IMG/VR virus record: IMGVR_UViG_3300032334_002567
Span: 248,001-312,000 of that record
Strand: one strand, 5' to 3'
DNA length: 64,000 nt
Each line of letters opens with the position of its first letter. The first letter of the stretch is position 1. The translations under genes and the position numbers were made by a program. The notes below the pieces were generated by a model. It saw nothing but the letters and a program-made list of their open reading frames with translations, had not been told where the DNA came from and did no database searches. This document shows positions 3,710-54,327 of the stretch, piece by piece.

Positions 3710-5119
3710 ATGCCAACAGCAAGAGCATTGGTCGGAGGAGGCGTAGTTTATGACAATACAAATGTTGATTCAAAATATCAACCATACTACCAGTTCAGAG
3801 CAACAGACAGATATCAGATGTATACAGGTAGAAATAATGGTTATATGTATCACGGAAGTGCGAGCATAATGCCCGCATCAACTCTGTACGACGGCAAACC
3901 CGGAGGGAATTATTACTGTAGCAATTTGTTCTCCGGGATTCTTCCGTACCAGAATCCGAACAACCAATGCTATCTGCTCGACAACCTAGGTCAATTAAAT
4001 AGTCCGAGTATCTCTTACTACATGATGTTCGGATTGCCCGTTACCATAACAAAGTACAGATTGTGGAATGGATTTATAGCCAATGTTAAAGCAAATTTGA
4101 GATGGGCATCGGTAAATGATTTCGGCAATGAAACTCCTCAAGACTGGGCGCTTTATGGCACGAACGACGGATTTTCTTGGAATCTTATTGATTCAAGATC
4201 AAGTCAGGCAAGATTGCCGTATGCGACAGCCAATCATGCAAAAGATAGTTCATACAGCGAATTCACAATATCCAATCCGACTCCGTACAAAACCTACAAA
4301 CTTGCTGTGACCAAAGGGGGGAGAACAGCCACCGATTGTAGAAAAAGCGGTTGTAGTTACGCCATGTATCAACTTGGAGAAATGCAACTTTGGGGATATG
4401 AAAGTCCAGACACCAATTGTTCCATACATGGAATTGATACGATATTCCCAAAAGCTGTATATCCCACAAGCAACGGATCTTTAAGTACAGAATCAGTAAT
4501 AACTTACCAAGGAATTAGTTCCTTTTCAAAGATTTTTACTTTATGTCCATCTTACATTGAAGTTAGATCTGATGCCAAGGATGGCGGGGGTAACGCTTGG
4601 CCAGGAAGAGACTCTCACCCTCAAAGCGAATTCGTAAATGGCTCATGGGTGTCCAAATATTGCATACAATCAATTTATTACTATGGATACGGTGTGCCCA
4701 GCAGAATATCTTATGCGTGGGCGAGATCATATGAAGGATGGGGATTTAATTCTAGTCTAACATATGTTCCTATTGGCACCATATGGGGAACAGGCTACAT
4801 AGACTTTGGAGCGTCCGTAACCATTTCTTCTTACAAAATCAGAGGGGGAGCAGAGTGGTATAATGGAGATATTTCTCCCAATTCTTGGACATTATATGGA
4901 TCCAACGATTTCTCGTCCTGGACCAGCATAAGCAACATATCTTCCAATTCCGCCATGAATTATTTGACATACACAAATTTCACTATATCATCCCCATCAT
5001 CGTACAGGTATTATAAAATGGAAATAAAAGGTGGCAAAGCTCAACAATGCGGAAAAAGCGGATGCACCGCATACACGGCCAGAATTTACGACATGCAGAT
5101 AGTGGGGAAAATATCATGA
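3710..5119 (+). CDS. tandem discoidin-like domain protein, paralogous to the C-terminus of 743..3700
   Basis: shares [35 protein letters not shown] and CxKSGC segments with the upstream gene. Confidence 0.7.
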   Translation: MPTARALVGGGVVYDNTNVDSKYQPYYQFRATDRYQMYTGRNNGYMYHGSASIMPASTLYDGKPGGNYYCSNLFSGILPYQNPNNQCYLLDNLGQLNSPSISYYMMFGLPVTITKYRLWNGFIANVKANLRWASVNDFGNETPQDWALYGTNDGFSWNLIDSRSSQARLPYATANHAKDSSYSEFTISNPTPYKTYKLAVTKGGRTATDCRKSGCSYAMYQLGEMQLWGYESPDTNCSIHGIDTIFPKAVYPTSNGSLSTESVITYQGISSFSKIFTLCPSYIEVRSDAKDGGGNAWPGRDSHPQSEFVNGSWVSKYCIQSIYYYGYGVPSRISYAWARSYEGWGFNSSLTYVPIGTIWGTGYIDFGASVTISSYKIRGGAEWYNGDISPNSWTLYGSNDFSSWTSISNISSNSAMNYLTYTNFTISSPSSYRYYKMEIKGGKAQQCGKSGCTAYTARIYDMQIVGKIS

Positions 5120-5646
5120 GAGGCGTCTGTGCAATATATAACGGTAAGGCTCTCGCCCTCGTCACAAGAAGCGGCAGTCACGCCTTGATGAATTTGATGT
5201 TGCCAGAGGATCATATAAAAACCCATCCAGAACACCTGAAAGAAGAGCTTTGGCACCCAATAATGAATTTGCAAGGTCACGATCTGATTCTAGGACTCCC
5301 AGAATGCGAAGTCTGTTGCATGATAAGAAATCCCGTAGATAGATTTAGAAGTGCTTGTGCGAGAAGAAATAAGACTGTAGAAGAAGGTTTGTTGGAAGAT
5401 GAAGTTCACTTTTGGACTATGGAAAGTATGGGCCTTTTAAATGATAAAATTAAATACTTTCTATTTCCAGAACAAATTAATGAGTGTGCGGATTGGTTAG
5501 GATTACCAACTCCAGTACCAAGACTGAACGAAGAAAAAGACGAAAAAAAGCCATTTCTAAATGAAAAGCAACTTAAATTAGTAATCGAACAATACTATAA
5601 TGATAATGAGTTATATCAAAAATTAAGGGAGAATTATTATGAGTAA
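5116..5646 (+). CDS. sulfotransferase-like protein
   Basis: TRSGS (5'-PSB-like) and RNPVDRFRS (3'-PB-like) motifs; start moved to the ATGA overlap at 5116. Confidence 0.6.
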   Translation: MRGVCAIYNGKALALVTRSGSHALMNLMLPEDHIKTHPEHLKEELWHPIMNLQGHDLILGLPECEVCCMIRNPVDRFRSACARRNKTVEEGLLEDEVHFWTMESMGLLNDKIKYFLFPEQINECADWLGLPTPVPRLNEEKDEKKPFLNEKQLKLVIEQYYNDNELYQKLRENYYE

Positions 5647-8156: not shown

Positions 8157-8229
8157 GCTGGTGTAGCACAATTGGCGGTGCAGCTGACCTGTAATCAGCA
8201 GGCTGTGGGTTCAAATCCCACCGCCAGCT
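8157..8229 (+). tRNA. tRNA-Thr(UGU)
   Basis: cloverleaf: GCTGGTG/CGCCAGC acceptor, GCTGA-CCTGTAA-TCAGC anticodon arm, GTGGG-TTCAAAT-CCCAC T arm. Confidence 0.92.
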
Positions 8230-8297: not shown

Positions 8298-8948
8298 ATG
8301 AATATGTCGCAAGCAGGTAAGTTAGGTGCAATTGCATCTTTAAGCACTCACAATAAAAATAAAGAACTAAGAGTAGAAAAATACGACAACAATCCAAATA
8401 GATGCTTTACATGTGATTCTATTTTAGATTATGAGTCAAGAAGTAAAAAATTCTGCAACAGATCCTGTGCAGCAAAAACAAACAATATTGGGGTTACAAG
8501 AAATAAGAAAAATTTTAGTGAATCTTATTGTCCATCATCTAAAAATAAAAAAATTAAGTTCAAACCAGATTGTTTGAATTGTAGTAAGTCACTTAAAAAA
8601 AATGCATCAAAGTTTTGTTCTCTTATTTGTTTCGCTGATTATCAGTGGAGAACAAAAAAAGAAAAAATTTCTTTAAACAGCAAAGTAGAAGGAATTAACC
8701 AGGCTAAAAGGTATCTAAAAGAAGTAAGGGGAAATTCGTGTGAAATGTGTGGAATAGACACATGGGCAGGAAAGCCAATCCTACTTATTTGCGATCACAT
8801 AGACGGAAATTCAAGTAATTGGGAATTAAAAAACCTAAGACTAATTTGTTCTAATTGTGATGCTACAACACCTTTCTATAAAAATAAAAATAAAGGAAAT
8901 GGAAGATCATATAGGAGAGAAAGATATAAACTAGGTAAAAGTTTTTAA
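8298..8948 (+). CDS. HNH homing endonuclease with N-terminal Zn-binding repeats
   Basis: CxxC...KFCxxxC repeats; CEMCG...DHIDGN..N....NLRLICSNC HNH core. Confidence 0.85.
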   Translation: MNMSQAGKLGAIASLSTHNKNKELRVEKYDNNPNRCFTCDSILDYESRSKKFCNRSCAAKTNNIGVTRNKKNFSESYCPSSKNKKIKFKPDCLNCSKSLKKNASKFCSLICFADYQWRTKKEKISLNSKVEGINQAKRYLKEVRGNSCEMCGIDTWAGKPILLICDHIDGNSSNWELKNLRLICSNCDATTPFYKNKNKGNGRSYRRERYKLGKSF

Positions 8949-13065: not shown

Positions 13066-13911
13066 TTATCTTTTGTTCTTTCTTGTTGATCTGTATTTAT
13101 TGTTTTTTGCTATGATGCTATATGGCTTTTTCTCAATTTTCTCAATTTTTTCTATAGTTTTTGCTTTTTTATTCTTAACTTTATCTATAGTCGTTATTTT
13201 CTTATATTCCTCTGCGTTTATTAATACCTTATCATTTAAACCATTCTTCAATAGGTTTTTCATAAAGTCTTGTCTATAAATTTCAGATCTACCGCACAAA
13301 TGAACAAACAGAGCATCCTGTATAGGGTAGAAACGTTCTAAACAATTTAGGACATATGGTTTGTGTATAATAATTCTATCTAAATTATTAGGTATAATTT
13401 TCTCAACCATCACCCTTTGCTCATATGGGAATATTCTCCACATTTTATCATTGCGTAGATCCCAGATATCTGACTCAATTTTAATTGCTGCCTTGCTTAC
13501 AAATTTGACTCCTGTATTAACTTTGTTTTCTGTTTTTATTTTATATTTGAAGTCCCACACAGAAGGATAATCTTTTTCTGGCTTTTCATAAAACAAATGA
13601 TATAGTATATTATTATCTGATAAATCAATCGTTTCTTCTATTCTAAGGTTCATGCGATTCGCAAAGATGTCAGTATCAAGCCATACAAACCATTTCGCAT
13701 TAGGAAATCTTAGTGATGCTCTTTTTAGTATTTCACACCTTCTATAGTGTAATTGATGAACCTCTTTTTCAATCGGTTCTAACTCATCATAATAAAAATC
13801 ATAATCGTTTAAAGAGCAATAATGATCAATGGTTTTACGAGTGTTAACTGCAAACTCCACATCAAGCGGCCAATGACCACTAACTAATACAATATCACCT
13901 TTTTTATACAT
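13066..13911 (-). CDS. glycosyltransferase, GT34 (GMA12/MNN10)-like
   Basis: YC..NDY.F, WFVWLDTD (DxD), NTGV, YEQ, FVHLCG. Confidence 0.8.
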   Translation of the reverse strand: MYKKGDIVLVSGHWPLDVEFAVNTRKTIDHYCSLNDYDFYYDELEPIEKEVHQLHYRRCEILKRASLRFPNAKWFVWLDTDIFANRMNLRIEETIDLSDNNILYHLFYEKPEKDYPSVWDFKYKIKTENKVNTGVKFVSKAAIKIESDIWDLRNDKMWRIFPYEQRVMVEKIIPNNLDRIIIHKPYVLNCLERFYPIQDALFVHLCGRSEIYRQDFMKNLLKNGLNDKVLINAEEYKKITTIDKVKNKKAKTIEKIEKIEKKPYSIIAKNNKYRSTRKNKR

Positions 13912-14225
13912 AAAATCCTTGATATGTGATAAATTATATTTTATATATGAACTTTAGACTATTTATCTCTTGATGGCATTTGTGACTTGGCCCGTACCAC
14001 ACATACAAAAAATCAAAGATTATATACAGGATAGATAGTTCAACAATCCAAAGCACTATAAACCGGACCATCATTATTTGTCATAAATTCTCCTAATAAT
14101 GGATATCTATCACATCAATATAAAGAAATATTTTGTGTAACAGTTTTTAAATCAATTGGTGAAGCACTATTAAATATATTGTATAAAAAAAGACGGGGGC
14201 ATATATAAGTCAAAAGAGGTATATC

Positions 14226-14285
14226 ATGACATATAATAACAATGATGGGCCGGTTTATGCTAATTTTCATGAAATAATTAAATGA
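14226..14285 (+). pseudogene. truncated DGPIY-leader cassette remnant
   Basis: MTYNNNDGPVY then stop; preceded by the same GGGGCATATATAAGTCAAAAGAGGTATATC block as 17737 and 18762. Confidence 0.65.
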
Positions 14286-15175
14286 AATTTAAAATAATAC
14301 TCAAAACAAAAAATGAAGATAACCTAATAGACATTTGGATAAAATACTACTCCAAAATGGTAGGCAAAGAAAATCTAATCATATTTGATAACAATAGTAC
14401 CAGCCAAAAAGTTTTAGATGTTTACAAACAACACTCAATAGAACCAATAGCTATTGAAAATCCAAATTCAATTAATTTTTTTCATAGACATGCAAATTTT
14501 TATGAAAACATATTTTCTAATTGTGATGCTTTTGCTATTTTAGATACAGATGAATTTTTGTGTGTTTATGAAGATGGTGTATTCAGAGCAGATAAAGTTT
14601 TAGACACAATACAAAACTCTGAAGCTCAAGTTCTTGGTTCTATTTGGCTAGACCAAATGCATCTAAGCGACAGTATTGAATACTTTTTACCAAATAAAAA
14701 CTGGAAAATTGATCACAATAAAAAATATGGTAAATCTATATTTAAAACATCTTATACAGAAATTAAAAATTATATTTATGGACATAATATATGTTGCAAA
14801 GATGCAGATACAAATACCAATTTAATTTTATTGCATCTAGATAGAACAAACCCTGAAATTAGAATTAAAAATTGCATTGACCTAAGTATAATAGAAAGTA
14901 ATAATCATCAGAAGAAAGAATTGTTTGATGAACTTCAAAACATTAAGCTGACAGGCAAAGCAAGTAATTGGTTTCTAGATAGCAATTTTCCTGATAATTT
15001 TATGACAGGGGTTCATAAATTAAGAGAAATACAAGAATATTATCGAGATAGATATTCTTATTTAAAAAAACGCTATGGAACAAGCGAAGAATATATCAGA
15101 ACAAATGTAATCAATCATTATATTTACGGAGAACAACATAAGCAAGAGATTTTTTATAGAGACAAATTTTTTTAA
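14282..15175 (+). CDS. glycosyltransferase family 2-like (Glyco_tranf_2_4)
   Basis: KNE...I..WI.YY, FDNNST, LDTDEF, GKSIF, GHN. Confidence 0.8.
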   Translation: MKFKIILKTKNEDNLIDIWIKYYSKMVGKENLIIFDNNSTSQKVLDVYKQHSIEPIAIENPNSINFFHRHANFYENIFSNCDAFAILDTDEFLCVYEDGVFRADKVLDTIQNSEAQVLGSIWLDQMHLSDSIEYFLPNKNWKIDHNKKYGKSIFKTSYTEIKNYIYGHNICCKDADTNTNLILLHLDRTNPEIRIKNCIDLSIIESNNHQKKELFDELQNIKLTGKASNWFLDSNFPDNFMTGVHKLREIQEYYRDRYSYLKKRYGTSEEYIRTNVINHYIYGEQHKQEIFYRDKFF

Positions 15176-15199
15176 GAGAAATAATGAGCCATATAAATA

Positions 15200-15421
15200 A
15201 TGAGCCACATATTAGATTTAAAATTTAAATACCACTTAATCATCAATGTTGATAAACAGCTGATTTTTGATGGACCAGATCCTGAAAGACCTTGGTTTTC
15301 TTCTATTGCAATGAATATTAAATTGGTTGATGAAGAAAATAAAGAAATTTTTTTAGACCAACAACAAAAAGATGAAATAATATCTACTCTTTCAAAAATA
15401 GGAAGCATAAATGGAAATTGA
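15200..15421 (+). CDS. hypothetical protein
   Basis: 73-aa ORF overlapping the next gene. Confidence 0.5.
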   Translation: MSHILDLKFKYHLIINVDKQLIFDGPDPERPWFSSIAMNIKLVDEENKEIFLDQQQKDEIISTLSKIGSINGN

Positions 15422-17630
15422 AGTAGAAAACGATTTTAACGAAGAATTCTATGAATTAGTCTTACCTGAGGTACAGGACTATTACAAAGGTTCCCAATTA
15501 TCGAAACGAGAAAGATACTACCATCATTATTTGAATTACGGACAGCATCTTTACAAGAATTGCACGGAAGCAGAGAAAAAACTGTTTGGAGACATTGAAG
15601 TAAAAGATAACTTCAATGAAGATCTTCACGAGAAGAGGCATCCGGAAGTTAAAGAATATATGATCTATATGGGCGATTGGGTAGCACAATTGTCTAAAAG
15701 AAAAAGATACTACCACCATTACTTTAACTATTGTGTGCCTGGTTGCGATACTTCTTCATTGAAAGAAATTAAAGAATATACACAAAATATAAGAAAAAAA
15801 TTGATCGAGAACCAAGAACTATACGAAAAACATAAAGGATCAATTGTTCTTGTTAATCATGTTTCTAATCCTTATGGAGCCACACATTATCTATTAAGCT
15901 TATTCAAGTTGCTTAAAAAAGAAGGAGTTAAAGTCTGTTTATTAGATGAAATAGTAAATGAGAAACTTTACTCAAAATATCAAATAGATACAAAAGATGT
16001 GATTTCATACGAACAAGATCTATTATTCCTCTGTTATATCTACGAAAAAATCAAACCCAAGGTTTTTTACTTAAACTCGATAAGAGGCATATTTGTAGAT
16101 TTCATCAATTTGAAAAATCCGAATGTGATTACACACAGTCATGAAATAGCAGATGTATACGGACGATATGACTTGTTACCGACTTATGTCGTATCCAAAA
16201 GAATCCAAAAGGAATTTGAAGACCAATGTAACCATAAACCAAAAATTCAACCCCCAATATTTTTAGATGAAACTCTTGAACTCATAGACAAAGAGTTTAA
16301 CAAGAAATTACCGAAAGTTTCAAATAGCAAAGGCGACATGGATCTTTCCAAAATAACTATCGGAATGTGCGGCCAGACCGAGACTAGAAAAAACCCAGAG
16401 CTTTTTGAAGCAGTCTCAAAATTATACCCGCAATACAATTTTTTATGGATAGGCGGAGAAAAAGGACACTTCACAGACAGCCATAATCTGTACCATGTTC
16501 CTGTAGTGCAGTTCCCTTTTGTCTACTATAAGCTAATAGACTATTTTATTCTATTTTCTCAGGAAGACCCTTGTCCATATGTGGTATTAGAAAATTTGTA
16601 TGTCAATAATAAAGTAATTACATTCAAAGATAACATATATACCGACCATAAGTGCGAACAAACAAAAGACATATATTTTGAATTTGATGGAAAAGTATCA
16701 CTTGAAAATTTGTGTAAGGTTATAGACCATCAAGTTATTGAAAAAACAAATAGAAAAGGAAATGGTAAAAAATACGTAATAGACAATTTTACTTCAATAA
16801 ATATAAATTGTCTAATTGAAGACATGGAATATTTTATGGTATGTCACGATCAAGAAATAATAATCAAACACATATCTGATAATAACCACAACAATTTTCA
16901 TTATATGTTTGTTGGAAATAAAAATTCAGATAAACTTAATAATACAGATAATAAAATTACGATCTGCCATGAACTGCCTAAGAATTTGGAACAATATCCT
17001 AATTTATGTAGTTTTACCGCATGGTATGCTATTTCTAAAAATTATTTTTCAAAGAATAAAAAAATATGCTTATTAGAGTATGATGTCAACTTATCTGATC
17101 AATTTTATGCATATCATGAAAAAGAAGTATGTAATCATATAGATGATCAAACAGTGGTTGCTTATTTCTATACTTTAACAGATCATTATGTATTTTATAA
17201 AAGCACTCCATATCTTGAAATAGCCTTAAAAAAGATCTATGATATAGATCTTAATAGTTTTGTTCAAAAATTTAAGAGCCAATATCCTTTATGGCCAAAC
17301 ACAACCAATATGTGTATGAGCAAAAATACATTAGATAAATTTGTAGACTGGTTTTTGCCTATGACCGATCTCTTTAAAGAAGATCCATTGGGATCTTATG
17401 TTCATGAAAGGGCGTTTTTTATTTTTTGTGTAATAAATAATATCGAGATTAAATATGTCAAAAGTCCAATATTATCACATAATCAACAGGCATCTCACCA
17501 AAACTTCGATGTTTACGGCAAAGTATTGAATATGTATAAAACTACAGTCTTAAACCAAGATATGATCTCTGATTATGACGAGATTTATGAGGAAGCATAC
17601 CGAATTAGCCTAATTAATTGTTCAAAATAA
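15411..17630 (+). CDS. multidomain glycosyltransferase (GT-B-like plus a second GT-like domain)
   Basis: N-terminal FNE..Y....PEV..RYYHHY repeats; H.S.PYGA, RKNPELF, S.EDPCP.V.LE GT4-like motifs; C-terminal LEYD...HER domain. Confidence 0.75.
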   Translation: MEIEVENDFNEEFYELVLPEVQDYYKGSQLSKRERYYHHYLNYGQHLYKNCTEAEKKLFGDIEVKDNFNEDLHEKRHPEVKEYMIYMGDWVAQLSKRKRYYHHYFNYCVPGCDTSSLKEIKEYTQNIRKKLIENQELYEKHKGSIVLVNHVSNPYGATHYLLSLFKLLKKEGVKVCLLDEIVNEKLYSKYQIDTKDVISYEQDLLFLCYIYEKIKPKVFYLNSIRGIFVDFINLKNPNVITHSHEIADVYGRYDLLPTYVVSKRIQKEFEDQCNHKPKIQPPIFLDETLELIDKEFNKKLPKVSNSKGDMDLSKITIGMCGQTETRKNPELFEAVSKLYPQYNFLWIGGEKGHFTDSHNLYHVPVVQFPFVYYKLIDYFILFSQEDPCPYVVLENLYVNNKVITFKDNIYTDHKCEQTKDIYFEFDGKVSLENLCKVIDHQVIEKTNRKGNGKKYVIDNFTSININCLIEDMEYFMVCHDQEIIIKHISDNNHNNFHYMFVGNKNSDKLNNTDNKITICHELPKNLEQYPNLCSFTAWYAISKNYFSKNKKICLLEYDVNLSDQFYAYHEKEVCNHIDDQTVVAYFYTLTDHYVFYKSTPYLEIALKKIYDIDLNSFVQKFKSQYPLWPNTTNMCMSKNTLDKFVDWFLPMTDLFKEDPLGSYVHERAFFIFCVINNIEIKYVKSPILSHNQQASHQNFDVYGKVLNMYKTTVLNQDMISDYDEIYEEAYRISLINCSK

Positions 17631-17736
17631 TGTTATCTTCCAATAATGGATATCTATCACATCAATATAAATGTGTAACAGTTCTTTAATGATATAAAAA
17701 AGGATGGGGGCATATATAAGTCAAAAGAGGTATATC

Positions 17737-17844
17737 ATGACATATAATAACGAAGATTGGCCGATTTATAGTGTTTTGAATGGTAAACCAGGTTATGTTT
17801 ATGACTATTTTGGTAATTGCAATGCTCAGGGATATCCAATATGA
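17737..17844 (+). pseudogene. short DGPIY-leader cassette (35 aa)
   Basis: MTYNNEDWPIYSVLNGKP leader with the conserved upstream block; body truncated. Confidence 0.65.
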
Positions 17845-17996
17845 ATGAAGCTGCCAAATGGCTGGGCCTGCCCACGCCGCTGCCGCATGAGGACGCCACC
17901 AACGAAGCCGACAAGCCGACTTTGACGCCAGAGCAGGAGGCCCGCGTGCGTGAGATTTACGCCGACGATATCTCGCTCTGGGAAAATCTTCAATAA
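17841..17996 (+). pseudogene. C-terminal fragment of a sulfotransferase-like paralog
   Basis: AKWLGLPTPLPH...KPTLT.EQ...REIY.DD..LWE matches the C-termini of 5116 and 19711; locally high GC. Confidence 0.7.
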
Positions 17997-18044
17997 TATA
18001 TAAAACTTAAAAATATAATTCTAAATAAAAAGAAGTAAAAACCT

Positions 18045-18617
18045 TTAAAAATTACCGCAAGTCTCATACATCGCTTCGTGGTGTTGATAATTATCTCCAT
18101 TATAAAATAAGTGAAACAAGGTTCCTATGCATGTAGAAGATAAAGTTGATGAGTTATTATTATAAAATGAAATTAATGTTGATTTTGTTTCTTCACAATT
18201 AATACCATTAGGCCAAACTAATGGATTTGGTGTTGAAACACTAGAAGATATGGTAGTAAATGTAAGAGGGCTATAATCTTCTGTCGTATCTGCACTAACG
18301 CCAACTTTAACGGTTCTTGTTTTAAAATTAACATATCCAAGATGATCATAATCTGGAGTATAAAGAGTTAATGCTTTATGTTCAACTATCTCAAACACAA
18401 ATGCCCAGCCAGGAGATGAACTCAAACTTGGTCCCCACGCTGCTTGAACAACTGCTGCATAAGCACCAATTGTAATGTCTCCACAAGTTAAAGGATTGTT
18501 ATACTCCCATGCCGTTCCATAATAAGTATCTTGCTGATTCCATCTAAATTCGTAGTTTTGAGGGTCCGCAGGAGACCACTTCCCACTCAACATACTATAA
18601 ATTGGTCCATCACTCAT
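18045..18617 (-). CDS. DGPIY-leader family protein (inverted copy)
   Basis: starts MSDGPIYSMLSGK. Confidence 0.75.
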   Translation of the reverse strand: MSDGPIYSMLSGKWSPADPQNYEFRWNQQDTYYGTAWEYNNPLTCGDITIGAYAAVVQAAWGPSLSSSPGWAFVFEIVEHKALTLYTPDYDHLGYVNFKTRTVKVGVSADTTEDYSPLTFTTISSSVSTPNPLVWPNGINCEETKSTLISFYNNNSSTLSSTCIGTLFHLFYNGDNYQHHEAMYETCGNF

Positions 18618-18761
18618 AACTCCCCCTTTTTAACTATGTATGATATTACAATATTAAAATTGTCCTGATATATGTCGAATTTATTTTCAAATTGTAACTT
18701 ATATAAAAGTTTTTGATGATATAAAAGATAGGGGGCATATATAAGTCAAAAGAGGTATATC

Positions 18762-19700
18762 ATGACATATAATAATGATGGTCCAATTTATAGTGTTTTA
18801 AGTGGAAAACCTCTTTTGTTCTCTGGTTTTGAGAAATACTCAATCAACAGAGGCGGCAGTATTGGGACTATTCAATACCCCGCAACTTGGTCAAGCACCA
18901 GCAATTCTTTTACTTTCACAGCCAATCCCAATAGGTCGCTTGACGTTGTTTTTACTCTCAGCGGAACCTCTTCCCTGACCGCCACTGTGCCTGCTCCCAG
19001 CTATTCCAACAGTTATTATAGACCTCGCATTCGCTCTTATAGTAACAACGGCGGGGATTTAGACAAAGACGGGTGGTACAACTACGGCAACTGGCCGTCA
19101 CTTCCTACTAGTCTGAATGCTGGTTCCTACTGGGTCGATGCTCCGGTTACTGGTGACGGCGGTTATCCCACTGCGCATACAATCACCCTCCAGTTTGCCA
19201 ACTCTGTGCTTACCAGTGCGAAACCGCGTGATATTTACACAGACTACACCCAATCCACACCAGCAGCGCAAGTTAGTGTAAGCGGTCTGGTGACATCGTT
19301 TACGGTTGCCCCCAACGCACAGCCTGGAAAGGTGTTCTTTACTGTACCGGCGGGTTCCGCGCGATCAGTGACTTTTGCCGACACTAGAGTTGCCTATACC
19401 CATCCGATCTCCACGCACTATATCGCAATCAGCAATGTCAATAGAATCTACGATCTCGACGAAAATCGGGGCATAATTCGCTCTGTTGTCAACTATTCAA
19501 ACTCTGGTTGGTATCTTGATGGCACCGGCACTTATTCATCGCCCTATACAGGAAATTCTAACACTATCAATAGTTCTGATTACTTCAAAACTAAGACTAT
19601 GACTCTCAATCCCGGCGATTACATAGTTGATCTGCGGGCTGGCTACGACAGCACCGGATACCCCGGCACCGGATACACCGGGACAATCACAATCACATGA
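18762..19700 (+). CDS. DGPIY-leader family protein, beta-rich body
   Basis: starts MTYNNDGPIYSVLSGKP; S/T/G/Y-rich body. Confidence 0.8.
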   Translation: MTYNNDGPIYSVLSGKPLLFSGFEKYSINRGGSIGTIQYPATWSSTSNSFTFTANPNRSLDVVFTLSGTSSLTATVPAPSYSNSYYRPRIRSYSNNGGDLDKDGWYNYGNWPSLPTSLNAGSYWVDAPVTGDGGYPTAHTITLQFANSVLTSAKPRDIYTDYTQSTPAAQVSVSGLVTSFTVAPNAQPGKVFFTVPAGSARSVTFADTRVAYTHPISTHYIAISNVNRIYDLDENRGIIRSVVNYSNSGWYLDGTGTYSSPYTGNSNTINSSDYFKTKTMTLNPGDYIVDLRAGYDSTGYPGTGYTGTITIT

Positions 19701-19710
19701 GGTGCAGCCA

Positions 19711-20223
19711 ATGAGAGGCGCAAAAATCACACTACCAAATGGGAAAAAGTTTGCTCTGGTACCTCGTAGCGGAAGCTACAGTATCATATGGCAAGCTTTA
19801 CCGACATCTCTAAGAAATCCAGTTGGAGAAAGATGGCATCCTATTAATGCTACTACTCACACTATAGGCTCACCATTAAATAGCGACGATATTTCTGGCT
19901 TATGTTGTTTAGTTAGAGATCCTATTGAAAGATTTAAATCAGCTTGTGCTAGACAACAAAAAACTGTAGAAGAAGGGCTTAACCTAATCGAAACTGATGT
20001 CCACTTTTGGACACTGAAATCTATGGGACTACTGACTGATGGAATAACCCACTTTCGCTTTCCTGATCAAATAGATGATTGTGCGCAATGGTTGGGGTTA
20101 GAGACTCCTGTGCCAATATTGAATAACGAACCTGAAGAAGGCAAGCCAGTTCTAACCGAAGACCAGAAGATTCTTATTCGTGAAGCATACTCTTCTGATG
20201 TAACTTTGTGGGAATCTTTATAA
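19711..20223 (+). CDS. sulfotransferase-like protein (paralog)
   Basis: PRSGS, RDPIERFKSACAR, VHFWTL; start moved to ATG 19711 after GAGG. Confidence 0.65.
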   Translation: MRGAKITLPNGKKFALVPRSGSYSIIWQALPTSLRNPVGERWHPINATTHTIGSPLNSDDISGLCCLVRDPIERFKSACARQQKTVEEGLNLIETDVHFWTLKSMGLLTDGITHFRFPDQIDDCAQWLGLETPVPILNNEPEEGKPVLTEDQKILIREAYSSDVTLWESL

Positions 20224-20239
20224 AAAGGAAAAAATTATT

Positions 20240-20584
20240 ATGGTATATGATACTGATGGGCCGATTTATAGCATGTTAACAGGGAAACCTGACCCATTCT
20301 GTTATTTTTGTGACAGTAACCAGGACGGACCTTATGCAACATGCGGACAAGGACCGCCAAACGGATACTTTAACGGATTTCTTACCAGTGCTGAACGAGA
20401 TAGTTGGTGTTATAGCCCGGTATTTAGAACCTATTGCAACCCTGAAATGGGATGTAGAGATTGCTGTTACTATGGGGACTGCATTGGGAACGCACATTCT
20501 TGCAGTTCTCGCGAAGCACTAGGATATACAGTTTACACGAATGACAACTGCAATGGCGTTGGATGGGGCCAGCCTTGTTCATGA
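20240..20584 (+). CDS. DGPIY-leader family protein, Cys-rich
   Basis: MVYDTDGPIYSMLTGKP followed by many Cys. Confidence 0.75.
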   Translation: MVYDTDGPIYSMLTGKPDPFCYFCDSNQDGPYATCGQGPPNGYFNGFLTSAERDSWCYSPVFRTYCNPEMGCRDCCYYGDCIGNAHSCSSREALGYTVYTNDNCNGVGWGQPCS

Positions 20585-20612
20585 GTTCAACAGTCATTTA
20601 AGGGGTTTAATT

Positions 20613-20987
20613 ATGGTATATGATGATAATGGGCCGATTTATAGCATGTTAAATGGTAAGCCTTGCTCAACAGACTTTTATAGCACAAATTTAAGAGATC
20701 CTGGTTGTCCATGTAGGTGTCTTTGGTTAGTAGGCTATGAAGCAACATACGTGAACAATGCCACAAGTTGTCCACCAGGAGGTTATGTTAATAATGGTTC
20801 TTTGGGTGAAGATAATTATTACAGTTGCTATGTGGTGGCAGACTGCAATTGCAGTAGTCCTTCGTTTTCAGCACCAGGATCAATTTTCACTCAACTTGAT
20901 CCAATGATAGGTGCTTGCAATGGTACTTACGGTATGCAGTGTGGAGTTTGCATTGAAGGACAATGCGCTTATGCAAGCATAGAGTAG
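20613..20987 (+). CDS. DGPIY-leader family protein, Cys-rich
   Basis: MVYDDNGPIYSMLNGKP from ATG 20613. Confidence 0.75.
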   Translation: MVYDDNGPIYSMLNGKPCSTDFYSTNLRDPGCPCRCLWLVGYEATYVNNATSCPPGGYVNNGSLGEDNYYSCYVVADCNCSSPSFSAPGSIFTQLDPMIGACNGTYGMQCGVCIEGQCAYASIE

Positions 20988-21029
20988 ACATCCTATTGGA
21001 ATAAAAATATAAATTAAAAGAGGTATATC

Positions 21030-21563
21030 ATGACATATAATAACGAAGATGGGCCGATTTATAGCATGTTGAGTGGAAAATGTAGTAGTGGATTTGTTTT
21101 ATCCAATTTCCCAGTGCCTAATTGCAACCTAGAAAGTTATCTCTTTAGTTATCAGAATTGCTACGAAGCAGTAAGTGGCTCGGGAGCAAGCGTCACTCAG
21201 AACGGTGACGGAGACATGTTTGACTATGGAAGTCCAAATGGAACCTACAATTTTAGTCCAGATGCTTTCGGGCAAGGAATTGATGGAAGCGAATCCGGCT
21301 ATTTACGCACAGGAAATAATGGCTACTTATTTATGCACAATAAAGATTATTCCTGTAGTGAAGACGGATATACTGGAGAGTTTTGGGTTTTCTTTAAACC
21401 AGGTTGTGATAGTTGGATTATAGCTACAGCACCAGGAACAAGAGGAAACTTCCCTACAACTGGTTGGACATTAACTCAAAAAGCTTTGGGCGTATATAGA
21501 GGTTGCGAAGGATGTGGTGCTAATGATCCAACATCTTTTAATTTGACTTTTAATTGTCTGTAA
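21030..21563 (+). CDS. DGPIY-leader family protein
   Basis: MTYNNEDGPIYSMLSGKC. Confidence 0.75.
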   Translation: MTYNNEDGPIYSMLSGKCSSGFVLSNFPVPNCNLESYLFSYQNCYEAVSGSGASVTQNGDGDMFDYGSPNGTYNFSPDAFGQGIDGSESGYLRTGNNGYLFMHNKDYSCSEDGYTGEFWVFFKPGCDSWIIATAPGTRGNFPTTGWTLTQKALGVYRGCEGCGANDPTSFNLTFNCL

Positions 21564-22421
21564 AGATAAAATACATATAATAACAATGATGGGCCGGATT
21601 ACCTCCTGTTAGCATGGTGACTTCTATGGTTAAGATAAGGCCTATTAATTTTGTGAAGCAATATTAAATATATTGTACAAAAAAGACGTTATTAATTTTG
21701 TGAAGCATTATTAATAATGTCTATTATAAGCTAATCATATGAGATATCCACCGTTTTGTGTAGCTTTTCACATATGATCTGGGAGATGTTTAGAGAGAAT
21801 TTTTAAGCAGTATTTGTGAAGTTAATAAATAGAAAAAACCCGCCCATATATAGTTAACGCAACTAGTATATGGGCAGGGTCCTCTAACAAATAAACAAAA
21901 TACATTTAACAAACAAATTTGTGTAACATAAGGAACAGACGAGCATTTTAACATGAAGATTCATAAGGTTATTAACTTGTGTAGACATTTTATGATTATT
22001 GGGTGTGTAACCCACAATATTGATAAGTAAAGTGGTAGTTTGGGATCATAACCCACAATAAGACTATTTTTCGTATGTTATCAAAAATAAGCTATAATTT
22101 GAATAAAATAGTATTATTGTGAAATATGGGCCAGGTAGTGATGAATGGTTGGGCCTAGCCAGCCTTTGTTTGAACGCTTGTTCACCTCCCAGTTGCTGGG
22201 AGGATTCCATCCTTGAGCCCTTAATTCATCAAATTATATAAGCATCTATTGATGTTATTTTTATATTCTTTTGGTCTTTGGAATCTTTTCACAACCTTTT
22301 TGTGCACCTTTAATTGAATATAAATGGGAGTGAAAAGATTCCAACTTTACCGAGCGGGAAAGTTTGGAACATTGAGGCAGGGTTTCACCCTTAAATGTCC
22401 CGAGCGGGAAGTTTTGACCTA

Positions 22422-22534
22422 CCGGATCTGGGTAGGGACTTTGAAAAGTTCTTCTTTCTCAGTTCCGGATCTGGGTAGCGACTTTGAAAAGTTCTTCTTT
22501 CTCAGTTCCGGATCTGGGTAGCGACTTTGAAAAG
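22422..22534. repeat. 43-bp tandem direct repeat (about 2.6 copies)
   Basis: CCGGATCTGGGTAGSGACTTTGAAAAGTTCTTCTTTCTCAGTT at 22422, 22465 and partial at 22508. Confidence 0.9.
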
Positions 22535-22785
22535 GTTGTGTTCTTAATTTAAAATTAGCGGCAATAACTTTTTGGCACGCATCTGCAGCTCCGGATCTGA
22601 AAAAGATACGAATTGGAGATAACCTAAGTGTCAGGTTCTTTAAGGGTTGAGATTTTGAGGTTCTTTTGCTATGTGAATTGACCCCTCTTGACAGCGACCC
22701 CCTTTTGAGTGATGGTGTGTTGCGGTATTGGAGCCGCACATCATTTTTAGCAGTTTTACTTCTAGGATTCCCATGACAAGAAAAG

Positions 22786-23196
22786 GTGATAACTGTGAAA
22801 TCTCTTATGACGCAGGGCGAAGTAGAAGCCCAGATTGGCTCGACCGTCTTAAAATTCTATGCTGATATGTTTAGTCGTGGTCCTCATCATATTCAGGTGG
22901 ATGTGTATCGGTCATCTGCTGTGGTAATTACACAGAATAATTTCAATAAGTCTGAAAAGCAGATGATGGAACTTAGTCCACAGATGTTTAGGGATATGAG
23001 ATTTCGAATTATTGATTCAAATAGAGCTATTTTGAATGCTTTTATTGAGGCGGCTACTGGTGTGGTTGTGAATTGTTTTCATCATGATGTATCTGTCCTG
23101 ACAGGTGAAGAGGCGTTTATTTTTTCGTTGAAAGGTTCGCCGTCATATAGGCTGAATCATAATAATGGCAAAAGCCATACTAAATGCTTTGCCTGA
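22786..23196 (+). CDS. DUF2294 (MpsC-like) family protein
   Basis: TQGEVEA.I.....KF......RGP..I.V......E......L...IE..TGV.V...HHD.S..TGEE.FIFSL pattern. Confidence 0.8.
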   Translation: MITVKSLMTQGEVEAQIGSTVLKFYADMFSRGPHHIQVDVYRSSAVVITQNNFNKSEKQMMELSPQMFRDMRFRIIDSNRAILNAFIEAATGVVVNCFHHDVSVLTGEEAFIFSLKGSPSYRLNHNNGKSHTKCFA

Positions 23197-24065
23197 TTTA
23201 ACACTTTTTGAGTTAAAGGGTCCGGAAGGTCCACATGGAAAAGTTGAATGGTCCTAAAGGTCCGAAAGGGCCGAAGGGTCCAAAAGGACTTTTCTTGTCT
23301 AATTTTAAATTTGTGTACTGCCCGGATCATCTTTTATACGTTCAGCGCATATCTATATGTCAAAGAAACATGATCTAGGTACATGAAAGATCATGTTTTT
23401 TCGGATAAGTGAGTAAACCGGGTTGCTAAAAAATGAACACTTAAGTGCTTACTGGCATTAGACTTGTGAATATTCTTGCAATGCTGTAAGAATCTGTAAC
23501 CTCCTTATTTTATTGGGGTTATGGCTTGCAAAAATCATGAAGCAATTCCCAGATCTGTTCGTAGTCCTTTATTTGGTTTTTCCCGTTCGGGAATATCGGC
23601 TCTTAAGGGCTTATTTTTTCCCGTTCGGGAGTATTTTGTGAAGTTCTTTTGGACAACCTTGGGTCAGGGCTCTGAGAAAAGATGTTCTTTGGGACAAATT
23701 GTGGACGTGACCATAAGAGATAAAATGAAAACGCCCCCTTGCAATCATCAGTAAGAGTTGAGTTTTGACTGATTATTGGTCTTTTTGATTAAAATTGGTT
23801 TGAAAATTGTGGATTATCAGTAATTATCAGTTGAAACGGAGGTTGTGCAGGCTGAAAAGATGGATTTTAAGACCAACGGACTATGTGCCCATAAGAAAAG
23901 ATGGTGGTTTTTTCCTTTGATTGGTTATTTCCCGAGAAAAGAAGGTTTTTTGGGTCTTGACAGAGTTGGTCAAGGGGTGTGAAAGTTGATTTGTACCCAA
24001 TGGGGGCAATTTATTTGTACCCTAAGGAGATAGGGTATCGAGTAATTTAAAATTAGGGAGGGTTT

Positions 24066-24308
24066 ATGGATGATTCTGAGGCGGTTCGTCGTGCAATGGT
24101 GGAAGAGATCAATAGTTCGCCGGGGGATAGGGCTGAGTTGGAGGCTAGGTATGGGCAGGTGTGGGATACTTCGGAGCTTGGTCGTGATTTTGAGGTGGTG
24201 AGTTTTGCTGCTCCGTTGGTGATTGCTAGGAATAAGGCTACCGGAGAGGTTGGTTCATTGTTTTTCCAGCACATGCCCCGGTTTTATTGGGGATGGAAGG
24301 CTGACTAA
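24066..24308 (+). CDS. hypothetical phage protein
   Basis: GGAGG RBS; WDT.EL..DFEV..F.AP.V......G..GSL.FQH.PRFY. Confidence 0.75.
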   Translation: MDDSEAVRRAMVEEINSSPGDRAELEARYGQVWDTSELGRDFEVVSFAAPLVIARNKATGEVGSLFFQHMPRFYWGWKAD

Positions 24309-45638: not shown

Positions 45639-45907
45639 GGAAGCGTAGCTCAGTTGGTAGAGCATCGGACTTCAAATAGGAGTGCTTATCGGGAAACTGA
45701 TAAAGTAGAACTGCTCAAATTCGGTGAACGCTTAACTGCCAATACCGAGCCAAGCCTAGAAATAGGAAGGTGTAGAGACTTGACGGGCAGCACCTAAAGT
45801 TGAAAAACAATGGTGAAGGTAAAGTCCAGACCACAAACAGAAATGGTAACGAAAGTTATAGTGGTAAGTTAATCCGTTGGTCCTGGGTTCGAGTCCCAGC
45901 GCTTCCA
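45639..45907 (+). tRNA. tRNA-Lys(UUU) interrupted by a group I intron (exons 45639-45672 and 45869-45907)
   Basis: GGAAGCG/CGCTTCC acceptor; spliced loop CT-TTT-AA; T arm CTGGG-TTCGAGT-CCCAG. Confidence 0.85.
45673..45868 (+). ncRNA. self-splicing group I intron (IC3-like), 196 nt, no ORF
   Basis: P1 ACTTC/GGAGT with U.G at the 5' splice site; CAAATTCGGTGAA, ATACCGAGCCAAG, GTGTAGAGACTTGACGG and AAGGTAAAGTCC core elements; terminal G. Confidence 0.85.
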
Positions 45908-52711: not shown

Positions 52712-53317
52712 ATGGACGCTGCAACTTTTGACAAGCTGACTCGGGGTGACGAATACCAGACTTTCTTTGCTCTTATGGAGTCTCTTGGCTATAAAAAGGT
52801 TCATGTGAACTACAGTGGTGGTGGTGATAGTGGTGGTACTGACAGTATTGACTTTTTGCCAGTTCCTAAAGACAAAAACAAGGACGAGAAGTACGATATT
52901 CAGCGACGTATTTCAGAGCATTTTGAGGAGTTTCTTTCCAATCCCATCTACAGCCGTCACGGCAGCTTTGCAGACGGTGGTGGCTATAGCGTCGATGGCG
53001 TGGTTGTTTGGGACATTCCCAACAAAGCAGTGACCATTGAAGGCACTGAGCATAATTGGGGATACAACGACAGCGAGGAAGATGATGAAGAGGAAGTTTG
53101 TGAAGATACGGGGTTTGAAGAGCCTGTCTATTCTTTTGACGAAGGCAGTCCCGATCATGCTCGTAGCTTTGAAGTTCTTTGCTTTTATGTTCGTAATATC
53201 TTGAAGAAGAAGTTGCCCGAGGTTCTCCATAATCGGGTTCTTGCCGCTATCATTGAGGGCGATGAGAGTGCTAAGGATTACGTTGCTTTCTTGGAAGAAC
53301 AGAAGGAGAAGGTGTAA
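52712..53317 (+). CDS. DUF6878-like domain fused to the helical-repeat family C-terminal motif
   Basis: YSGGGDSG; C-terminal KKLPEVLHNRVLA......AKDY. Confidence 0.65.
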   Translation: MDAATFDKLTRGDEYQTFFALMESLGYKKVHVNYSGGGDSGGTDSIDFLPVPKDKNKDEKYDIQRRISEHFEEFLSNPIYSRHGSFADGGGYSVDGVVVWDIPNKAVTIEGTEHNWGYNDSEEDDEEEVCEDTGFEEPVYSFDEGSPDHARSFEVLCFYVRNILKKKLPEVLHNRVLAAIIEGDESAKDYVAFLEEQKEKV

Positions 53318-53667
53318 TGGGATTTCTTACTACTCTGACTTTTTATAACGACGGAGTTCATCTTCTTACGGAACACGCAGAGGACTTTTCCAAGCGTGTG
53401 CATGAAGTTGCAACAAGTTTCAATCACACCCCGGTAGAGATTCCATTGGGGAGTTTTGCTAATTTTGCAAAAGTCCAACGGAGCCGCCATGCAGATGACA
53501 ACACGGTTTATGTCCATTGTGGCAATACCGTTTGTGAAATGAATTGCAATTCAGAAGAAACGAAACGGATTATGAAACAAAATCCTGCTTTCTTTGCTAA
53601 AATGCTGGAAGAAATGAAAAAGCAGGTCGAGATTTTGGAAGGAATGAAGAATGGAAATGTTCGATAG
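53317..53667 (+). CDS. hypothetical protein
   Basis: MGF.TT...YND...HADD..VY...GN. Confidence 0.7.
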   Translation: MGFLTTLTFYNDGVHLLTEHAEDFSKRVHEVATSFNHTPVEIPLGSFANFAKVQRSRHADDNTVYVHCGNTVCEMNCNSEETKRIMKQNPAFFAKMLEEMKKQVEILEGMKNGNVR

Positions 53668-53839
53668 AGCGTTATCGCAGATTATCCTAAAGCAACGAGG
53701 CCAAAATCAAAAATTGGTCACTGAGCTATTGGATAAGATTTCTGAGGAGAGCAAAGAACGTCTTCATCGTATTATTCAAGACTTAGAATCAGATTTGGCA
53801 GTTGCAAAAAGAAAAGCAAGATTGCCTTGGATTCGATAG
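53651..53839 (+). CDS. hypothetical protein
   Basis: overlapping ORF in the operon. Confidence 0.55.
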   Translation: MEMFDRALSQIILKQRGQNQKLVTELLDKISEESKERLHRIIQDLESDLAVAKRKARLPWIR

Positions 53840-53907
53840 ATTTACAAAAAGTGAATTTTTTTGTAAGATAGCCCGGCGAGGCTAAAAAACAGTTGAAAGG
53901 AACTCAA

Positions 53908-54252: not shown

Positions 54253-54327
54253 TTTTGGCCGCAATTTTGGCCGCTTATTTTTTGTACCCTATAAGGTTGT
54301 TCTTCTAACTTATACAAGGAATAAATC

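What the first reader, a model, noticed from the sequence alone, without database searches (positions are those of the whole stretch)
14090..21700. Cassette family: constant promoter/RBS/16-aa leader (DGPIYSMLxGK) fused to unrelated variable bodies
Seen: five intact genes (18045 on -, 18762, 20240, 20613, 21030) and three remnants (14226, 17737, about 21573) share the leader. Three share the upstream block GGGGCATATATAAGTCAAAAGAGGTATATCATGACATATAATAA, and flanks are duplicated too (14093 vs 17641; 14159 vs 21653). Similarity stops right after GK(P), and the bodies are Cys-rich or beta-rich. Inference: the leader is an assembly or anchoring tag that displays interchangeable domains on the virion, and its DNA is a recombination handle for capturing new domains. 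This would be a diversification system needing no RT or invertase.
Basis: partly seen in the sequence, partly recalled or inferred. Interest (0 to 1): 0.7.

Follow-up and report, generated by a model that had tools for sequence, protein, structure and literature searches.

The report
Leader-tagged hypervariable phage mini-protein cassettes
A large uncultured freshwater phage carries an array of genes that all begin with the same 13-17-residue peptide (…DGPIYS[VM]LxGK) followed by unrelated, disulfide-rich or beta-rich bodies. This turns out to be a big undescribed family that travels with, and is sometimes fused to, a PaaK-like ligase, so it looks like a leader-guided maturation system for swappable extracellular modules.

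Summary

A leader profile finds about 88 mutually unrelated protein clusters in metagenomes that start with M[TV]Y[DN]N(N)DGPIYSxLxGK. The bodies are 25-330 aa, have no Pfam family and fall into 69 BLAST-unrelated groups. They are poor in Lys/Arg/His and rich in Cys, with an even Cys count in 85 of 92. Leader codons vary synonymously and upstream DNA is not conserved between phages, so selection acts on the peptide.

In relatives, leader genes fill variable slots of one conserved island: epimerase, GlmS, GT2, PaaK-like ligase, 134-aa orphan protein, sulfotransferase-like protein, small membrane protein. A sister ligase clade pairs with a sister motif (N-x-I-[ILV]-F-S-L-x-K-x-C), and in ten clusters it is fused in frame to motif-plus-Cys-rich units.

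One body also occurs fused to FN3 or PT-linker fibre-type proteins.

Best reading: a recognition tag for ligase-centred maturation of exchangeable extracellular modules. Virion anchoring is unproven, and cassette exchange is evolutionary rather than programmed.

The parts
14040..14084 (-).
   Evidence: translation; inverted repeat I3
14089..14190 (+). Upstream flank, with copies at 17636-17690 and 21650-21684
   Evidence: direct repeats D6, D13 and D7
14196..14239 (+). Shared promoter-like/RBS/start block, copy 1 (other copies at 17707 and 18732; partial copy at 21010)
14226..14285 (+). Leader stub of 19 codons. Its stop overlaps the start of the GT2-like gene (ATGA).
14282..17630 (+). Two inserted genes bracketed by duplicated leader 5' regions: a GT2-like gene (14282-15175) and a 739-aa gene with repeated N-terminal motifs (15411-17630)
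   Evidence: Pfam; repeats
17737..17844 (+). Truncated leader gene of 35 aa. It is the 5' part of a P0124-like 149-aa gene.
17817..17996 (+). GC-rich 3' fragment of a foreign sulfotransferase-like gene, matching the C-terminus of L058 2255-2746. This is a recombination scar.
18045..18617 (-). Leader gene, 190 aa, 4 Cys. Homologues are P0147 and L057 3194-3778.
18762..19700 (+). Leader gene, 312 aa, beta-rich and Cys-free. From FTGFAR onward the body also occurs fused to FN3 (P0215) or to a PT-linker protein (P0217).
19711..20223 (+). 170-aa sulfotransferase-like gene. It follows this body in every relative; a paralogue lies at window 5047-5646.
20240..20584 (+). Leader gene, 114 aa, 12 Cys
20613..20987 (+). 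Leader gene, 124 aa, 12 Cys. Homologue P0129 is 57% identical.
21030..21563 (+). Leader gene, 177 aa, 8 Cys
21571..21620 (+). Leader remnant without a start codon (TYNNNDGPDYLLLAW*)
21650..21684 (+). Copy of the upstream flank 14156-14190 at the right edge of the array
   Evidence: repeat D7
13066..13911 (-). GT34-like glycosyltransferase at the left edge
   Evidence: Pfam PF05637, E 2e-8

Best explanation
The leader (core P-I-[YF]-S-x-L-x-G-K, often followed by P-C) is a short recognition motif. It marks diverse extracellular-type modules as clients of a conserved phage island built around a PaaK-like adenylate-forming ligase. That island also carries a GT2 glycosyltransferase, a 134-aa orphan protein, a sulfotransferase-like protein and a small membrane protein.

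The logic resembles a RiPP leader peptide, or an enzyme-substrate fusion of the borosin type, but the clients are 3-35-kDa mini-proteins. One constant tag gives one maturation pathway (ligation, acylation or glycosylation near the invariant Lys/Ser), and any body can be placed behind the tag.

Because every gene starts with the same about 50 nt, homologous and illegitimate recombination at the tag swaps, duplicates, truncates and captures cassettes. In this genome the array has left the island and sits beside glycosyltransferase and tail-fibre-like genes.

- **Shown:** the family, its modularity, peptide-level selection, the island synteny, the ligase fusions and the recombination scars.
- **Inferred:** that the ligase (or the 134-aa protein) binds the tag, the chemistry involved, and that the products act outside the cell, either on the virion or released at lysis.
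For: **Family size**
- A leader profile finds 92 clusters at E<=1e-3 among 1.84e9 representatives. About 88 begin at or near residue 1 with the motif.

**Body diversity and composition**
- There are 69 unrelated body groups among 94 bodies, and no Pfam family in 88 of them.
- Cys count is even in 85 and odd in 7.
- Composition: K 1.3%, R 1.9%, H 0.6%, G 12%, Y 7%, C 7%.

**Selection on the peptide**
- Invariant residues use several different codons, and upstream DNA is unrelated between phages.

**Island synteny**
- Five of five arbitrarily chosen family members, plus L009, L029 and L032, lie next to the ligase (or a ligase remnant) and/or the 134-aa gene. The number and identity of leader genes differ per slot.
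- The ligase stop overlaps the leader-gene start in L009, L029 and L037.

**Co-divergence**
- The ANL2 clade is followed by Cys-rich proteins carrying a sister motif..[VI][VL]FSLxxKPC (G000 53167-53739, L055, L056).

**Fusion (Rosetta-stone) evidence**
- Ten ANL2 clusters are fused in frame to 1-2 units of N-x-I-[ILV]-F-S-L-x-K-x-C plus a Cys-rich module.
- The five-residue core [ILV][ILV]FS[LV] of that motif occurs 0 times in 44,716 aa of ligase domains.
- GT2-ligase fusion P0073 and GT2/ligase gene overlaps also exist.

**Ligase identity and co-occurrence**
- The ligase matches a solved phenylacetate-CoA ligase, 9s3l, at E 6e-5.
- G000 (79% complete), the two complete genomes G001 and G007, and the 244-kb contig of L023/L025 (completeness not determined) all carry both leader genes and the ligase.
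Against: - No physical or structural evidence shows that the ligase or the 134-aa protein touches the leader.
- In G000 the array is 145 kb from ligase 1.
- Some islands show leader genes without an adjacent ligase (L040, L057). These are short contigs, so the ligase may lie elsewhere in the genome.
- Ligase homologues also occur in plain glycan-synthesis clusters without recognisable leader genes. Adjacency could therefore reflect a shared hyperplastic region.
- Bodies of up to 330 aa are far larger than RiPP cores.
- No universal leader peptidase was found: no C39 peptidase, and the S8 peptidase is absent from the complete genome G001.
Confidence: 0.45

Rival explanations
1. Virion docking tag. 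The leader is a short strand that plugs interchangeable adhesin or receptor-binding modules non-covalently into a conserved acceptor on the tail, fibres or capsid.
For: - The body of the 312-aa protein recurs fused to an FN3 domain (P0215). It also recurs fused through a PT linker to a protein lying among giant Ig/Laminin_G/FN3 fibre-type genes (P0217).
- P0217 and the window's tail-like 985-aa and 360-aa ORFs share phrog_15511.
- Body composition resembles fibre tips, and even Cys counts point to an extracellular life.
- The leader is modelled as disordered and free in AF2.
- The array lies 4 kb from tail-protein-like genes.
Against: - No acceptor has been identified.
- The sister motif also occurs internally and repeatedly inside ligase fusion proteins, which an N-terminal plug would not explain.
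- Most bodies are 40-110-aa monomer-like Cys knots rather than fibres.
- Only one body family has fibre-type relatives.
- No cultured phage carries the tag, so no virion proteome exists.
Confidence: 0.25
2. Processing or export signal. The motif is a cleavage or export site, and the bodies are released as free disulfide-rich peptides or proteins (bacteriocin- or glycocin-like, or host-surface effectors).
For: - The architecture of conserved leader plus hypervariable Cys-rich core, with GT2 next door, parallels glycocins. This comparison is from memory of sublancin/SunS.
- Repeated motif-plus-core units in one polypeptide resemble multi-core precursors.
- S8 and trypsin-like peptidase genes lie near some islands.
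- A small membrane protein and a signal-peptide protein belong to the island.
Against: - The leader has no hydrophobic signal segment.
- There is no double-glycine motif and no C39 transporter.
- The S8 peptidase is missing from complete G001.
- Lys is usually followed by Pro, a poor trypsin-type site.
Confidence: 0.15
3. Capsid-targeting sequence, as in T4 internal proteins. The leader would direct the bodies into the prohead for injection.
For: The gene logic is the same: a short conserved N-terminus, unrelated bodies and cassette polymorphism (PMC3012670).
Against: - The bodies are acidic, Lys/Arg-poor and built for disulfides, which does not suit DNA-embedded proteins injected into the cytoplasm.
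- There is no L/I-x-E-type cleavage motif.
- No T4-type capsid or prohead protease was found, although that search was insensitive.
- The motif also occurs internally.
Confidence: 0.05
4. No peptide function. The shared 5' end is only a translation-initiation or regulatory cassette spread by duplication.
For: Three to four copies in this genome share an identical promoter/RBS/start sequence.
Against: - Across phages the DNA upstream is unrelated.
- Invariant residues use several synonymous codons: P uses CCG/CCA/CCT, L uses TTG/TTA/CTA, and G uses four codons.
- The motif is conserved inside fusion proteins, far from any start codon.
Confidence: 0.03

Closest known systems
RiPP leader peptides with promiscuous enzymes, and enzyme-precursor fusions (prochlorosins/ProcM, borosins; cited from memory)
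   Same: - A conserved leader sits in front of a hypervariable, often Cys-rich core.
- There are many precursors per genome.
- The modifying enzyme is encoded next door or fused to the substrate.
- Some precursors carry repeated recognition-plus-core units.
   Different: - The enzyme is a PaaK-like ANL ligase with no known RiPP role.
- Bodies are whole mini-proteins of up to 330 aa.
- The leader is only 13-17 aa.
- No leader peptidase or recognition element has been identified.
- The system is encoded by large lytic-type phages.
T4 internal proteins with the capsid targeting sequence (PMC3012670)
   Same: A short conserved N-terminal tag on unrelated bodies, in a phage, in a polymorphic cassette locus.
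   Different: - The composition and Cys content are different.
- There is no protease-site motif.
- This motif also works internally.
- This phage is not T4-like: G001 has a lambda-J-like central fibre hit and its terminase matches only general large-terminase PHROGs.
PeSL regulatory cassettes of T4-type phages (PMC2839356, PMC4122927)
   Same: Short conserved 5' regulatory DNA flanks novel ORFs and serves as a substrate for modular shuffling. The three or four identical promoter/RBS blocks here behave the same way.
   Different: PeSLs are non-coding. Here the conserved unit across phages is a peptide, and the promoter is not conserved between phages.
T2-type gp38 adhesins and short N-terminal anchors of secondary receptor-binding proteins (PMC3157838; Klebsiella-phage anchors from memory)
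   Same: A conserved N-terminal attachment part is followed by a hypervariable, Gly/aromatic-rich specificity part. A small accessory gene lies downstream of the 312-aa body.
   Different: Attachment to a fibre is not shown here. The tag is far shorter and most bodies are Cys knots.
Polymorphic toxin loci with orphan cassettes (CDI/Rhs; from memory)
   Same: A conserved junction motif demarcates variable C-terminal modules, and truncated orphan copies retaining the junction lie nearby as recombination substrates.
   Different: There are no immunity genes and no toxin domains (no Pfam hit in 88 bodies). The conserved part is 17 aa, not a large delivery domain.

Membership tests
RiPP-type leader/core precursor system | Conserved leader with a hypervariable core, and several precursors per genome | tested here: met
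RiPP-type leader/core precursor system | A dedicated modifying enzyme genetically coupled to the precursors | tested here: met
   Adjacency or overlap, co-divergence with the ANL2 motif, and in-frame fusions
RiPP-type leader/core precursor system | The leader is bound by the enzyme or a recognition element, and the core is chemically modified | not testable with these tools
   This needs binding assays and mass spectrometry.
RiPP-type leader/core precursor system | A small peptide product (below about 10 kDa) after leader removal | tested here: inconclusive
   Median body length is 90 aa, but bodies reach 330 aa. No common peptidase was found.
Glycocins (GT2-modified disulfide bacteriocins) | A double-glycine leader and a C39 peptidase-ABC exporter | tested here: not met
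   The leader ends in GK, not GG/GA/GS. There is no PF03412 in G000 or G001, and the control genomes did respond.
Glycocins (GT2-modified disulfide bacteriocins) | A GT2 glycosyltransferase next to Cys-rich precursors | tested here: met
   GT2 lies directly upstream of the ligase in L032, L055 and L056, and is fused in P0073.
T4 internal proteins / capsid targeting sequence | The N-terminal tag ends in a prohead-protease site (L/I-x-E), and a T4-type prohead protease is present | tested here: not met
   The leader has no such motif. PF03420 and PF07068 were not found, but that search also found nothing in the control genomes, so absence of the protease is weak evidence.
T4 internal proteins / capsid targeting sequence | Small basic proteins packed with the DNA | tested here: not met
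   Lys+Arg+His is 3.8% and the bodies are Cys-rich.
Phage receptor-binding proteins with a conserved N-terminal anchor | The variable part is a receptor-binding module of fibre or spike type | tested here: inconclusive
   One body family occurs in fibre-type fusion proteins. The other bodies have no relatives, and the AF2 model is poor.
Phage receptor-binding proteins with a conserved N-terminal anchor | The protein is a virion component bound through the anchor | not testable with these tools
   No cultured relative exists.
Diversity-generating retroelement / invertible shufflon | A reverse transcriptase with template/variable repeats, or a site-specific invertase | tested here: not met
   No RVT_1 and no Resolvase in the 381-kb record. 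There are no body-level repeats. Tyrosine recombinases were not searched.
PaaK-like adenylate-forming (ANL) enzymes: the island ligase | Sequence similarity to a solved phenylacetate-CoA ligase, including the Y-x-x-G-D region | tested here: met
   Profile match to PDB 9s3l at E 6e-5 over the C-terminal half. JGI labels several homologues as PaaK-like. There is no Pfam hit.

The most novel reading that the evidence does not exclude
A natural 'tag-and-ligate' display system. The 13-17-aa leader would be an acceptor peptide whose invariant Lys (or Ser) is joined by the phage's PaaK-like ligase, working with GT2, to a carboxylate on a phage-made glycan or virion protein. Any Cys-knot or beta-sandwich binding module placed behind the tag would then be covalently mounted on the particle. 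This would be a phage equivalent of AviTag/SpyTag chemistry that makes host-range modules plug-and-play.
Probability: 0.12. Interest if true: 0.9.

Novelty: new variant of a known kind. Interest (0 to 1): 0.7.

Why it matters
- It defines a large, unannotated protein family: about 90 sequence-unrelated clusters, with none of 88 representative members scanned matching any Pfam family. It is unified only by a 17-residue tag and confined to large uncultured freshwater phages.
- It gives the family a testable partner, an unusual PaaK-like ligase that is sometimes fused to its presumed substrates.
- If the ligase modifies the tag, this would be a new leader-guided protein-modification chemistry. 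It would also be a ready-made short acceptor peptide for protein engineering.
- If the modules sit on the virion, it would be a compact way for phages to exchange host-recognition parts.
- Either way, it explains a hyperplastic genome island shared by a lineage of large phages that recur in lake metagenomes.

Tried and rejected
- **Complex prediction.** Complex prediction with ligase + 134-aa protein + leader residues 1-45 gave no answer. It is not evidence either way.
- **312-aa body model.** AF2 gave pLDDT 52, too poor for fold search.
- **134-aa protein.** The AF2 model was excellent (pLDDT 94), but no fold match came from PDB Foldseek, AFDB clusters, BFVD or the VIA wide search (best Z 4.5). 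Only the C-terminal beta-alpha-beta-beta piece resembles half an ACT domain.
- **Family scans.** Pfam and PHROGs on the window bodies, and NCBIfam and Pfam on the island proteins, found nothing useful.
- **Atlas.** The search on the 177-aa body gave no lead.
- **Cultured phages.** INPHARED has no match to the locus DNA, the ligase or the leader.
- **Candidate shared late promoter.** CATATATAAG occurs only 5 times in the genome, 3 of them here, so no regulon can be claimed.
- **Disulfide machinery.** There is no Erv1/ALR (that search also found nothing in the control genomes). Two thioredoxin-like genes exist in G000 but none in G001. This is uninformative.
- **Read-level heterogeneity.** Only Logan contigs were available. 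They break at the leader repeats, and the single 'joint' is the repeat at 14226, so population variation could not be tested.
- **Tyr sulfation of the leader by the sulfotransferase-like neighbour.** Rejected as essential, because Tyr is replaced by Phe in several leaders.
- **Lys-free bodies as proof of Lys chemistry.** Rejected, because Arg and His are equally depleted.
Full report
**1. What is in the window**

The window is bases 248,001-312,000 of a 381,443-bp IMG/VR virus record, estimated 79% complete.

Five ORFs begin with M-[TV]-Y-[ND]-x-(x)-[DN]-G-P-I-Y-S-[MV]-L-x-G-K, or with the short form MSDGPIYSMLSGK:
- 18045-18617(-)
- 18762-19700
- 20240-20584
- 20613-20987
- 21030-21563

Damaged copies:
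- 17737-17844 is a truncated sixth copy. Its 35 residues match the start of a 149-aa metagenomic protein, P0124.
- Remnants lie at 14226-14285 and 21571-21620.

A degenerate leader pattern matches six times in the 381-kb genome, all within this region. Its reversed control matches zero times.

The 44-nt block GGGGCATATATAAGTCAAAAGAGGTATATCATGACATATAATAA is shared by three copies, and half of it by a fourth.

Together these repeats show that about 150-190 bp of leader 5' region (14089-14271 matching 17636-17782) brackets two inserted genes, 14282-15175 (GT2-like) and 15411-17630. The leader stub at 14226 ends in an ATGA overlap with the first of them.

Behind the truncated copy at 17737 lies a GC-rich 3' fragment of a foreign sulfotransferase-like gene (17817-17996). 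It is nearly identical in protein to the C-terminus of L058 2255-2746. These are recombination scars located at the leader.

**2. The family is large and modular**

Pattern scans of viral contigs found the same N-terminus in 12 contigs other than the window's own phage.

A 31-column leader profile, searched against 1.84 billion cluster representatives, returned 92 clusters at E<=1e-3. About 88 of them carry the motif at or near residue 1.

After the Lys, the sequences are unrelated:
- 94 bodies fall into 69 BLAST components, 53 of them singletons.
- None of the 88 members scanned has a Pfam family.
- Median body length is 90 aa, with a range of about 25-330 aa.

Composition is distinctive:
- Gly 12%, Ser 9%, Thr 8%, Pro 7%, Tyr 7%, Cys 7%, Asn 7%, Trp 2.6%
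- Lys 1.3%, Arg 1.9%, His 0.6%
- Cys number is even in 85 bodies and odd in 7

This is the signature of disulfide-bonded, extracellular binding-type modules.

**3. Selection acts on the peptide, not the DNA**

Between phages, the 70 nt upstream of the leader genes are unrelated.

Invariant residues are written with several codons: Pro uses CCG/CCA/CCT, Leu uses TTG/TTA/CTA, Gly uses four codons and Lys uses AAA/AAG.

The 'constant promoter/RBS' therefore describes only recent duplicates inside this genome.

**4. Genomic context in relatives**

In other phages the leader genes sit in one conserved island:

epimerase - GlmS-like - GT2 - PaaK-like ligase (about 400 aa) - [leader genes] - 134-aa protein - [leader genes] - sulfotransferase-like 170 aa - [leader gene] - 95-aa membrane protein - about 100-aa signal-peptide protein

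The number and identity of leader genes differ from phage to phage:
- L032: three
- L040: five
- L057: five
- L009: three

All five family members that I picked without regard to context fall in this island: P0138, P0179, P0160, P0128 and P0201.

Some orthologous pairs do persist, such as the 312/277-aa body with its downstream 170-aa gene.

In G000 the ligase/134-aa/membrane trio (G000 120451-122437) is contiguous and empty. The leader array has moved 145 kb away, next to glycosyltransferase genes and about 4 kb from tail-protein-like ORFs.

**5. Link to the ligase**

The ligase has no Pfam model. A profile of 16 homologues matches a solved phenylacetate-CoA ligase (9s3l, E 6e-5), and JGI labels several homologues as PaaK-like.

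Three independent genomic observations tie it to the leader.

(a) *Adjacency.* There is tight adjacency with overlapping stop/start in L009, L029 and L037.

(b) *Co-divergence.* A second ligase clade includes G000 53736-54950(-), 42% identical to ligase 1. It is followed by Cys-rich proteins with a sister N-terminal motif:
- G000: DDILFVMLAK
- L056: DVVFSLAKPC
- L055: EVLFSLYDKPC

(c) *Fusion.* Ten distinct clusters of that clade are single polypeptides. In them the ligase is followed by one or two units of N-x-I-[ILV]-F-S-L-x-K-(x)-C plus a Cys-rich module. The five-residue core [ILV][ILV]FS[LV] of that motif never occurs in 44,716 aa of ligase domains.

GT2 overlaps the ligase gene and is fused to it in P0073.

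The genomes in which both were looked for all carry leader genes and the ligase: G000 (79% complete), the complete G001 and G007, and the 244-kb L023/L025 contig of undetermined completeness.

Because the motif works internally in the fusions, it is not an N-terminus-specific signal.

**6. Evidence for an extracellular or virion role**

Homologues of the 312-aa body start exactly after the leader, at FTGFAR. In P0215 they are preceded by an FN3 domain. In P0217 they are preceded by a 250-aa domain and a PT linker.

P0217 lies among giant Ig/Laminin_G/FN3 genes, followed by the same about 170-aa partner gene.

Logan contigs from two other lake samples match the window only from 18817 onward. 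That is the leader/body junction, and it is preceded there by PT-linker-coding DNA.

This supports a surface-exposed, fibre-associated role for at least this body. It also shows that the leader is an alternative to covalent fusion with a structural protein.

**7. Mechanism**

I conclude that the leader is most likely a recognition or acceptor motif for a ligase-centred maturation pathway that serves many interchangeable extracellular modules.

The chemistry is inferred, not shown. It could be acylation or ligation at the conserved Lys, or glycosylation at the Ser.

The destination of the products is open. Anchoring on the virion, possibly as the result of the ligation, is a live rival or complement.

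No reverse transcriptase or serine invertase is present. Diversification is by ordinary recombination at the shared 5' end, as with PeSL cassettes in T4-type phages (PMC2839356) and the T4 internal-protein locus (PMC3012670).

**8. Limits**

- There is no cultured relative.
- Structure prediction of the 312-aa body failed, and no small Cys-rich body was modelled.
- The 134-aa protein is a confident orphan fold.
- Raw reads were not available.

Noticed in passing
window 45662-45849: Group I catalytic intron (Rfam RF00028, 52 bits, just above the gathering score) on the + strand. Which gene it interrupts was not examined.
   Followed up: no
window 21700-24300: ORF-poor 2.6-kb stretch just right of the array. 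It has three pairs of short direct repeats: 21999/22040, 22343/22393 and 22422/22465. Rfam finds nothing there. It could be a regulatory region or an unknown RNA.
   Followed up: no
window 17850-17980: Markedly GC-rich patch in an AT-rich region. It is the 3' end of a sulfotransferase-like gene of foreign (L058-like) origin, fused behind a truncated leader gene.
   Followed up: partly
window 8298-8948: HNH endonuclease ORF (phrog_10822, E 2e-17) next to tRNA-Thr (8157-8229), inside the tail-fibre-like gene block. The window has six tRNA genes in all.
   Followed up: no
window 3710-5646: A 469-aa tail-protein-like ORF with an F5/8 type C domain is followed by a paralogue (5047-5646) of the sulfotransferase-like gene that follows the 312-aa leader protein. 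The 'body plus about 170-aa partner' arrangement therefore recurs with a fibre-type gene.
   Followed up: partly
G000 116001-126000 (L042): - The ligase/134-aa/membrane trio is preceded by a YeaH-like VWA protein and a SpoVR-like protein (annotation from sequence reading only).
- It is followed by an acyl-carrier-protein-like 71-aa ORF (L042 6660-6875, with a DSL motif).
- A CATATATAAG box like the one upstream of the leader genes lies at G000 120104.
   Followed up: no
L042 5749-6153 and homologues P0225-P0298: The 134-aa island protein is always 134 aa and is 50-92% identical across most of about 75 clusters (two outliers of 156 and 160 aa are about 35% identical). It gives an AF2 model of pLDDT 94 with no match in any structure library. 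It is a confident orphan fold with a C-terminal half-ACT-like beta-alpha-beta-beta unit.
   Followed up: yes
G001 41905-109036 (L049-L052): The complete 150-kb relative devotes about 67 kb to a run of giant ORFs (5937, 2488, 2241, 1728, 1516 aa and more), presumably fibre or baseplate proteins.
   Followed up: no
L009 3997-4311(-): A 104-aa ORF homologous to the body of leader protein P0145 but lacking a leader. It sits directly after a 59-aa leader gene. It is either a split gene or a leaderless body.
   Followed up: no
L056 4741-5844 and L035 5292-8336: Downstream of more distant ligases lie long Cys-rich proteins: 367 aa with three Cys modules joined by PT linkers, and 1014 aa with 52 Cys and Ser linkers. 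The ligase/Cys-rich-protein pairing therefore extends beyond the leader family proper.
   Followed up: partly
L043 2756-3166(-), L056 5880-6215, L019 367-969: A small protein family with a conserved P-x-C-x-C...M-[DN]-x-[NW]-G motif recurs next to both canonical and sister-motif Cys-rich genes. Its function is unknown.
   Followed up: no
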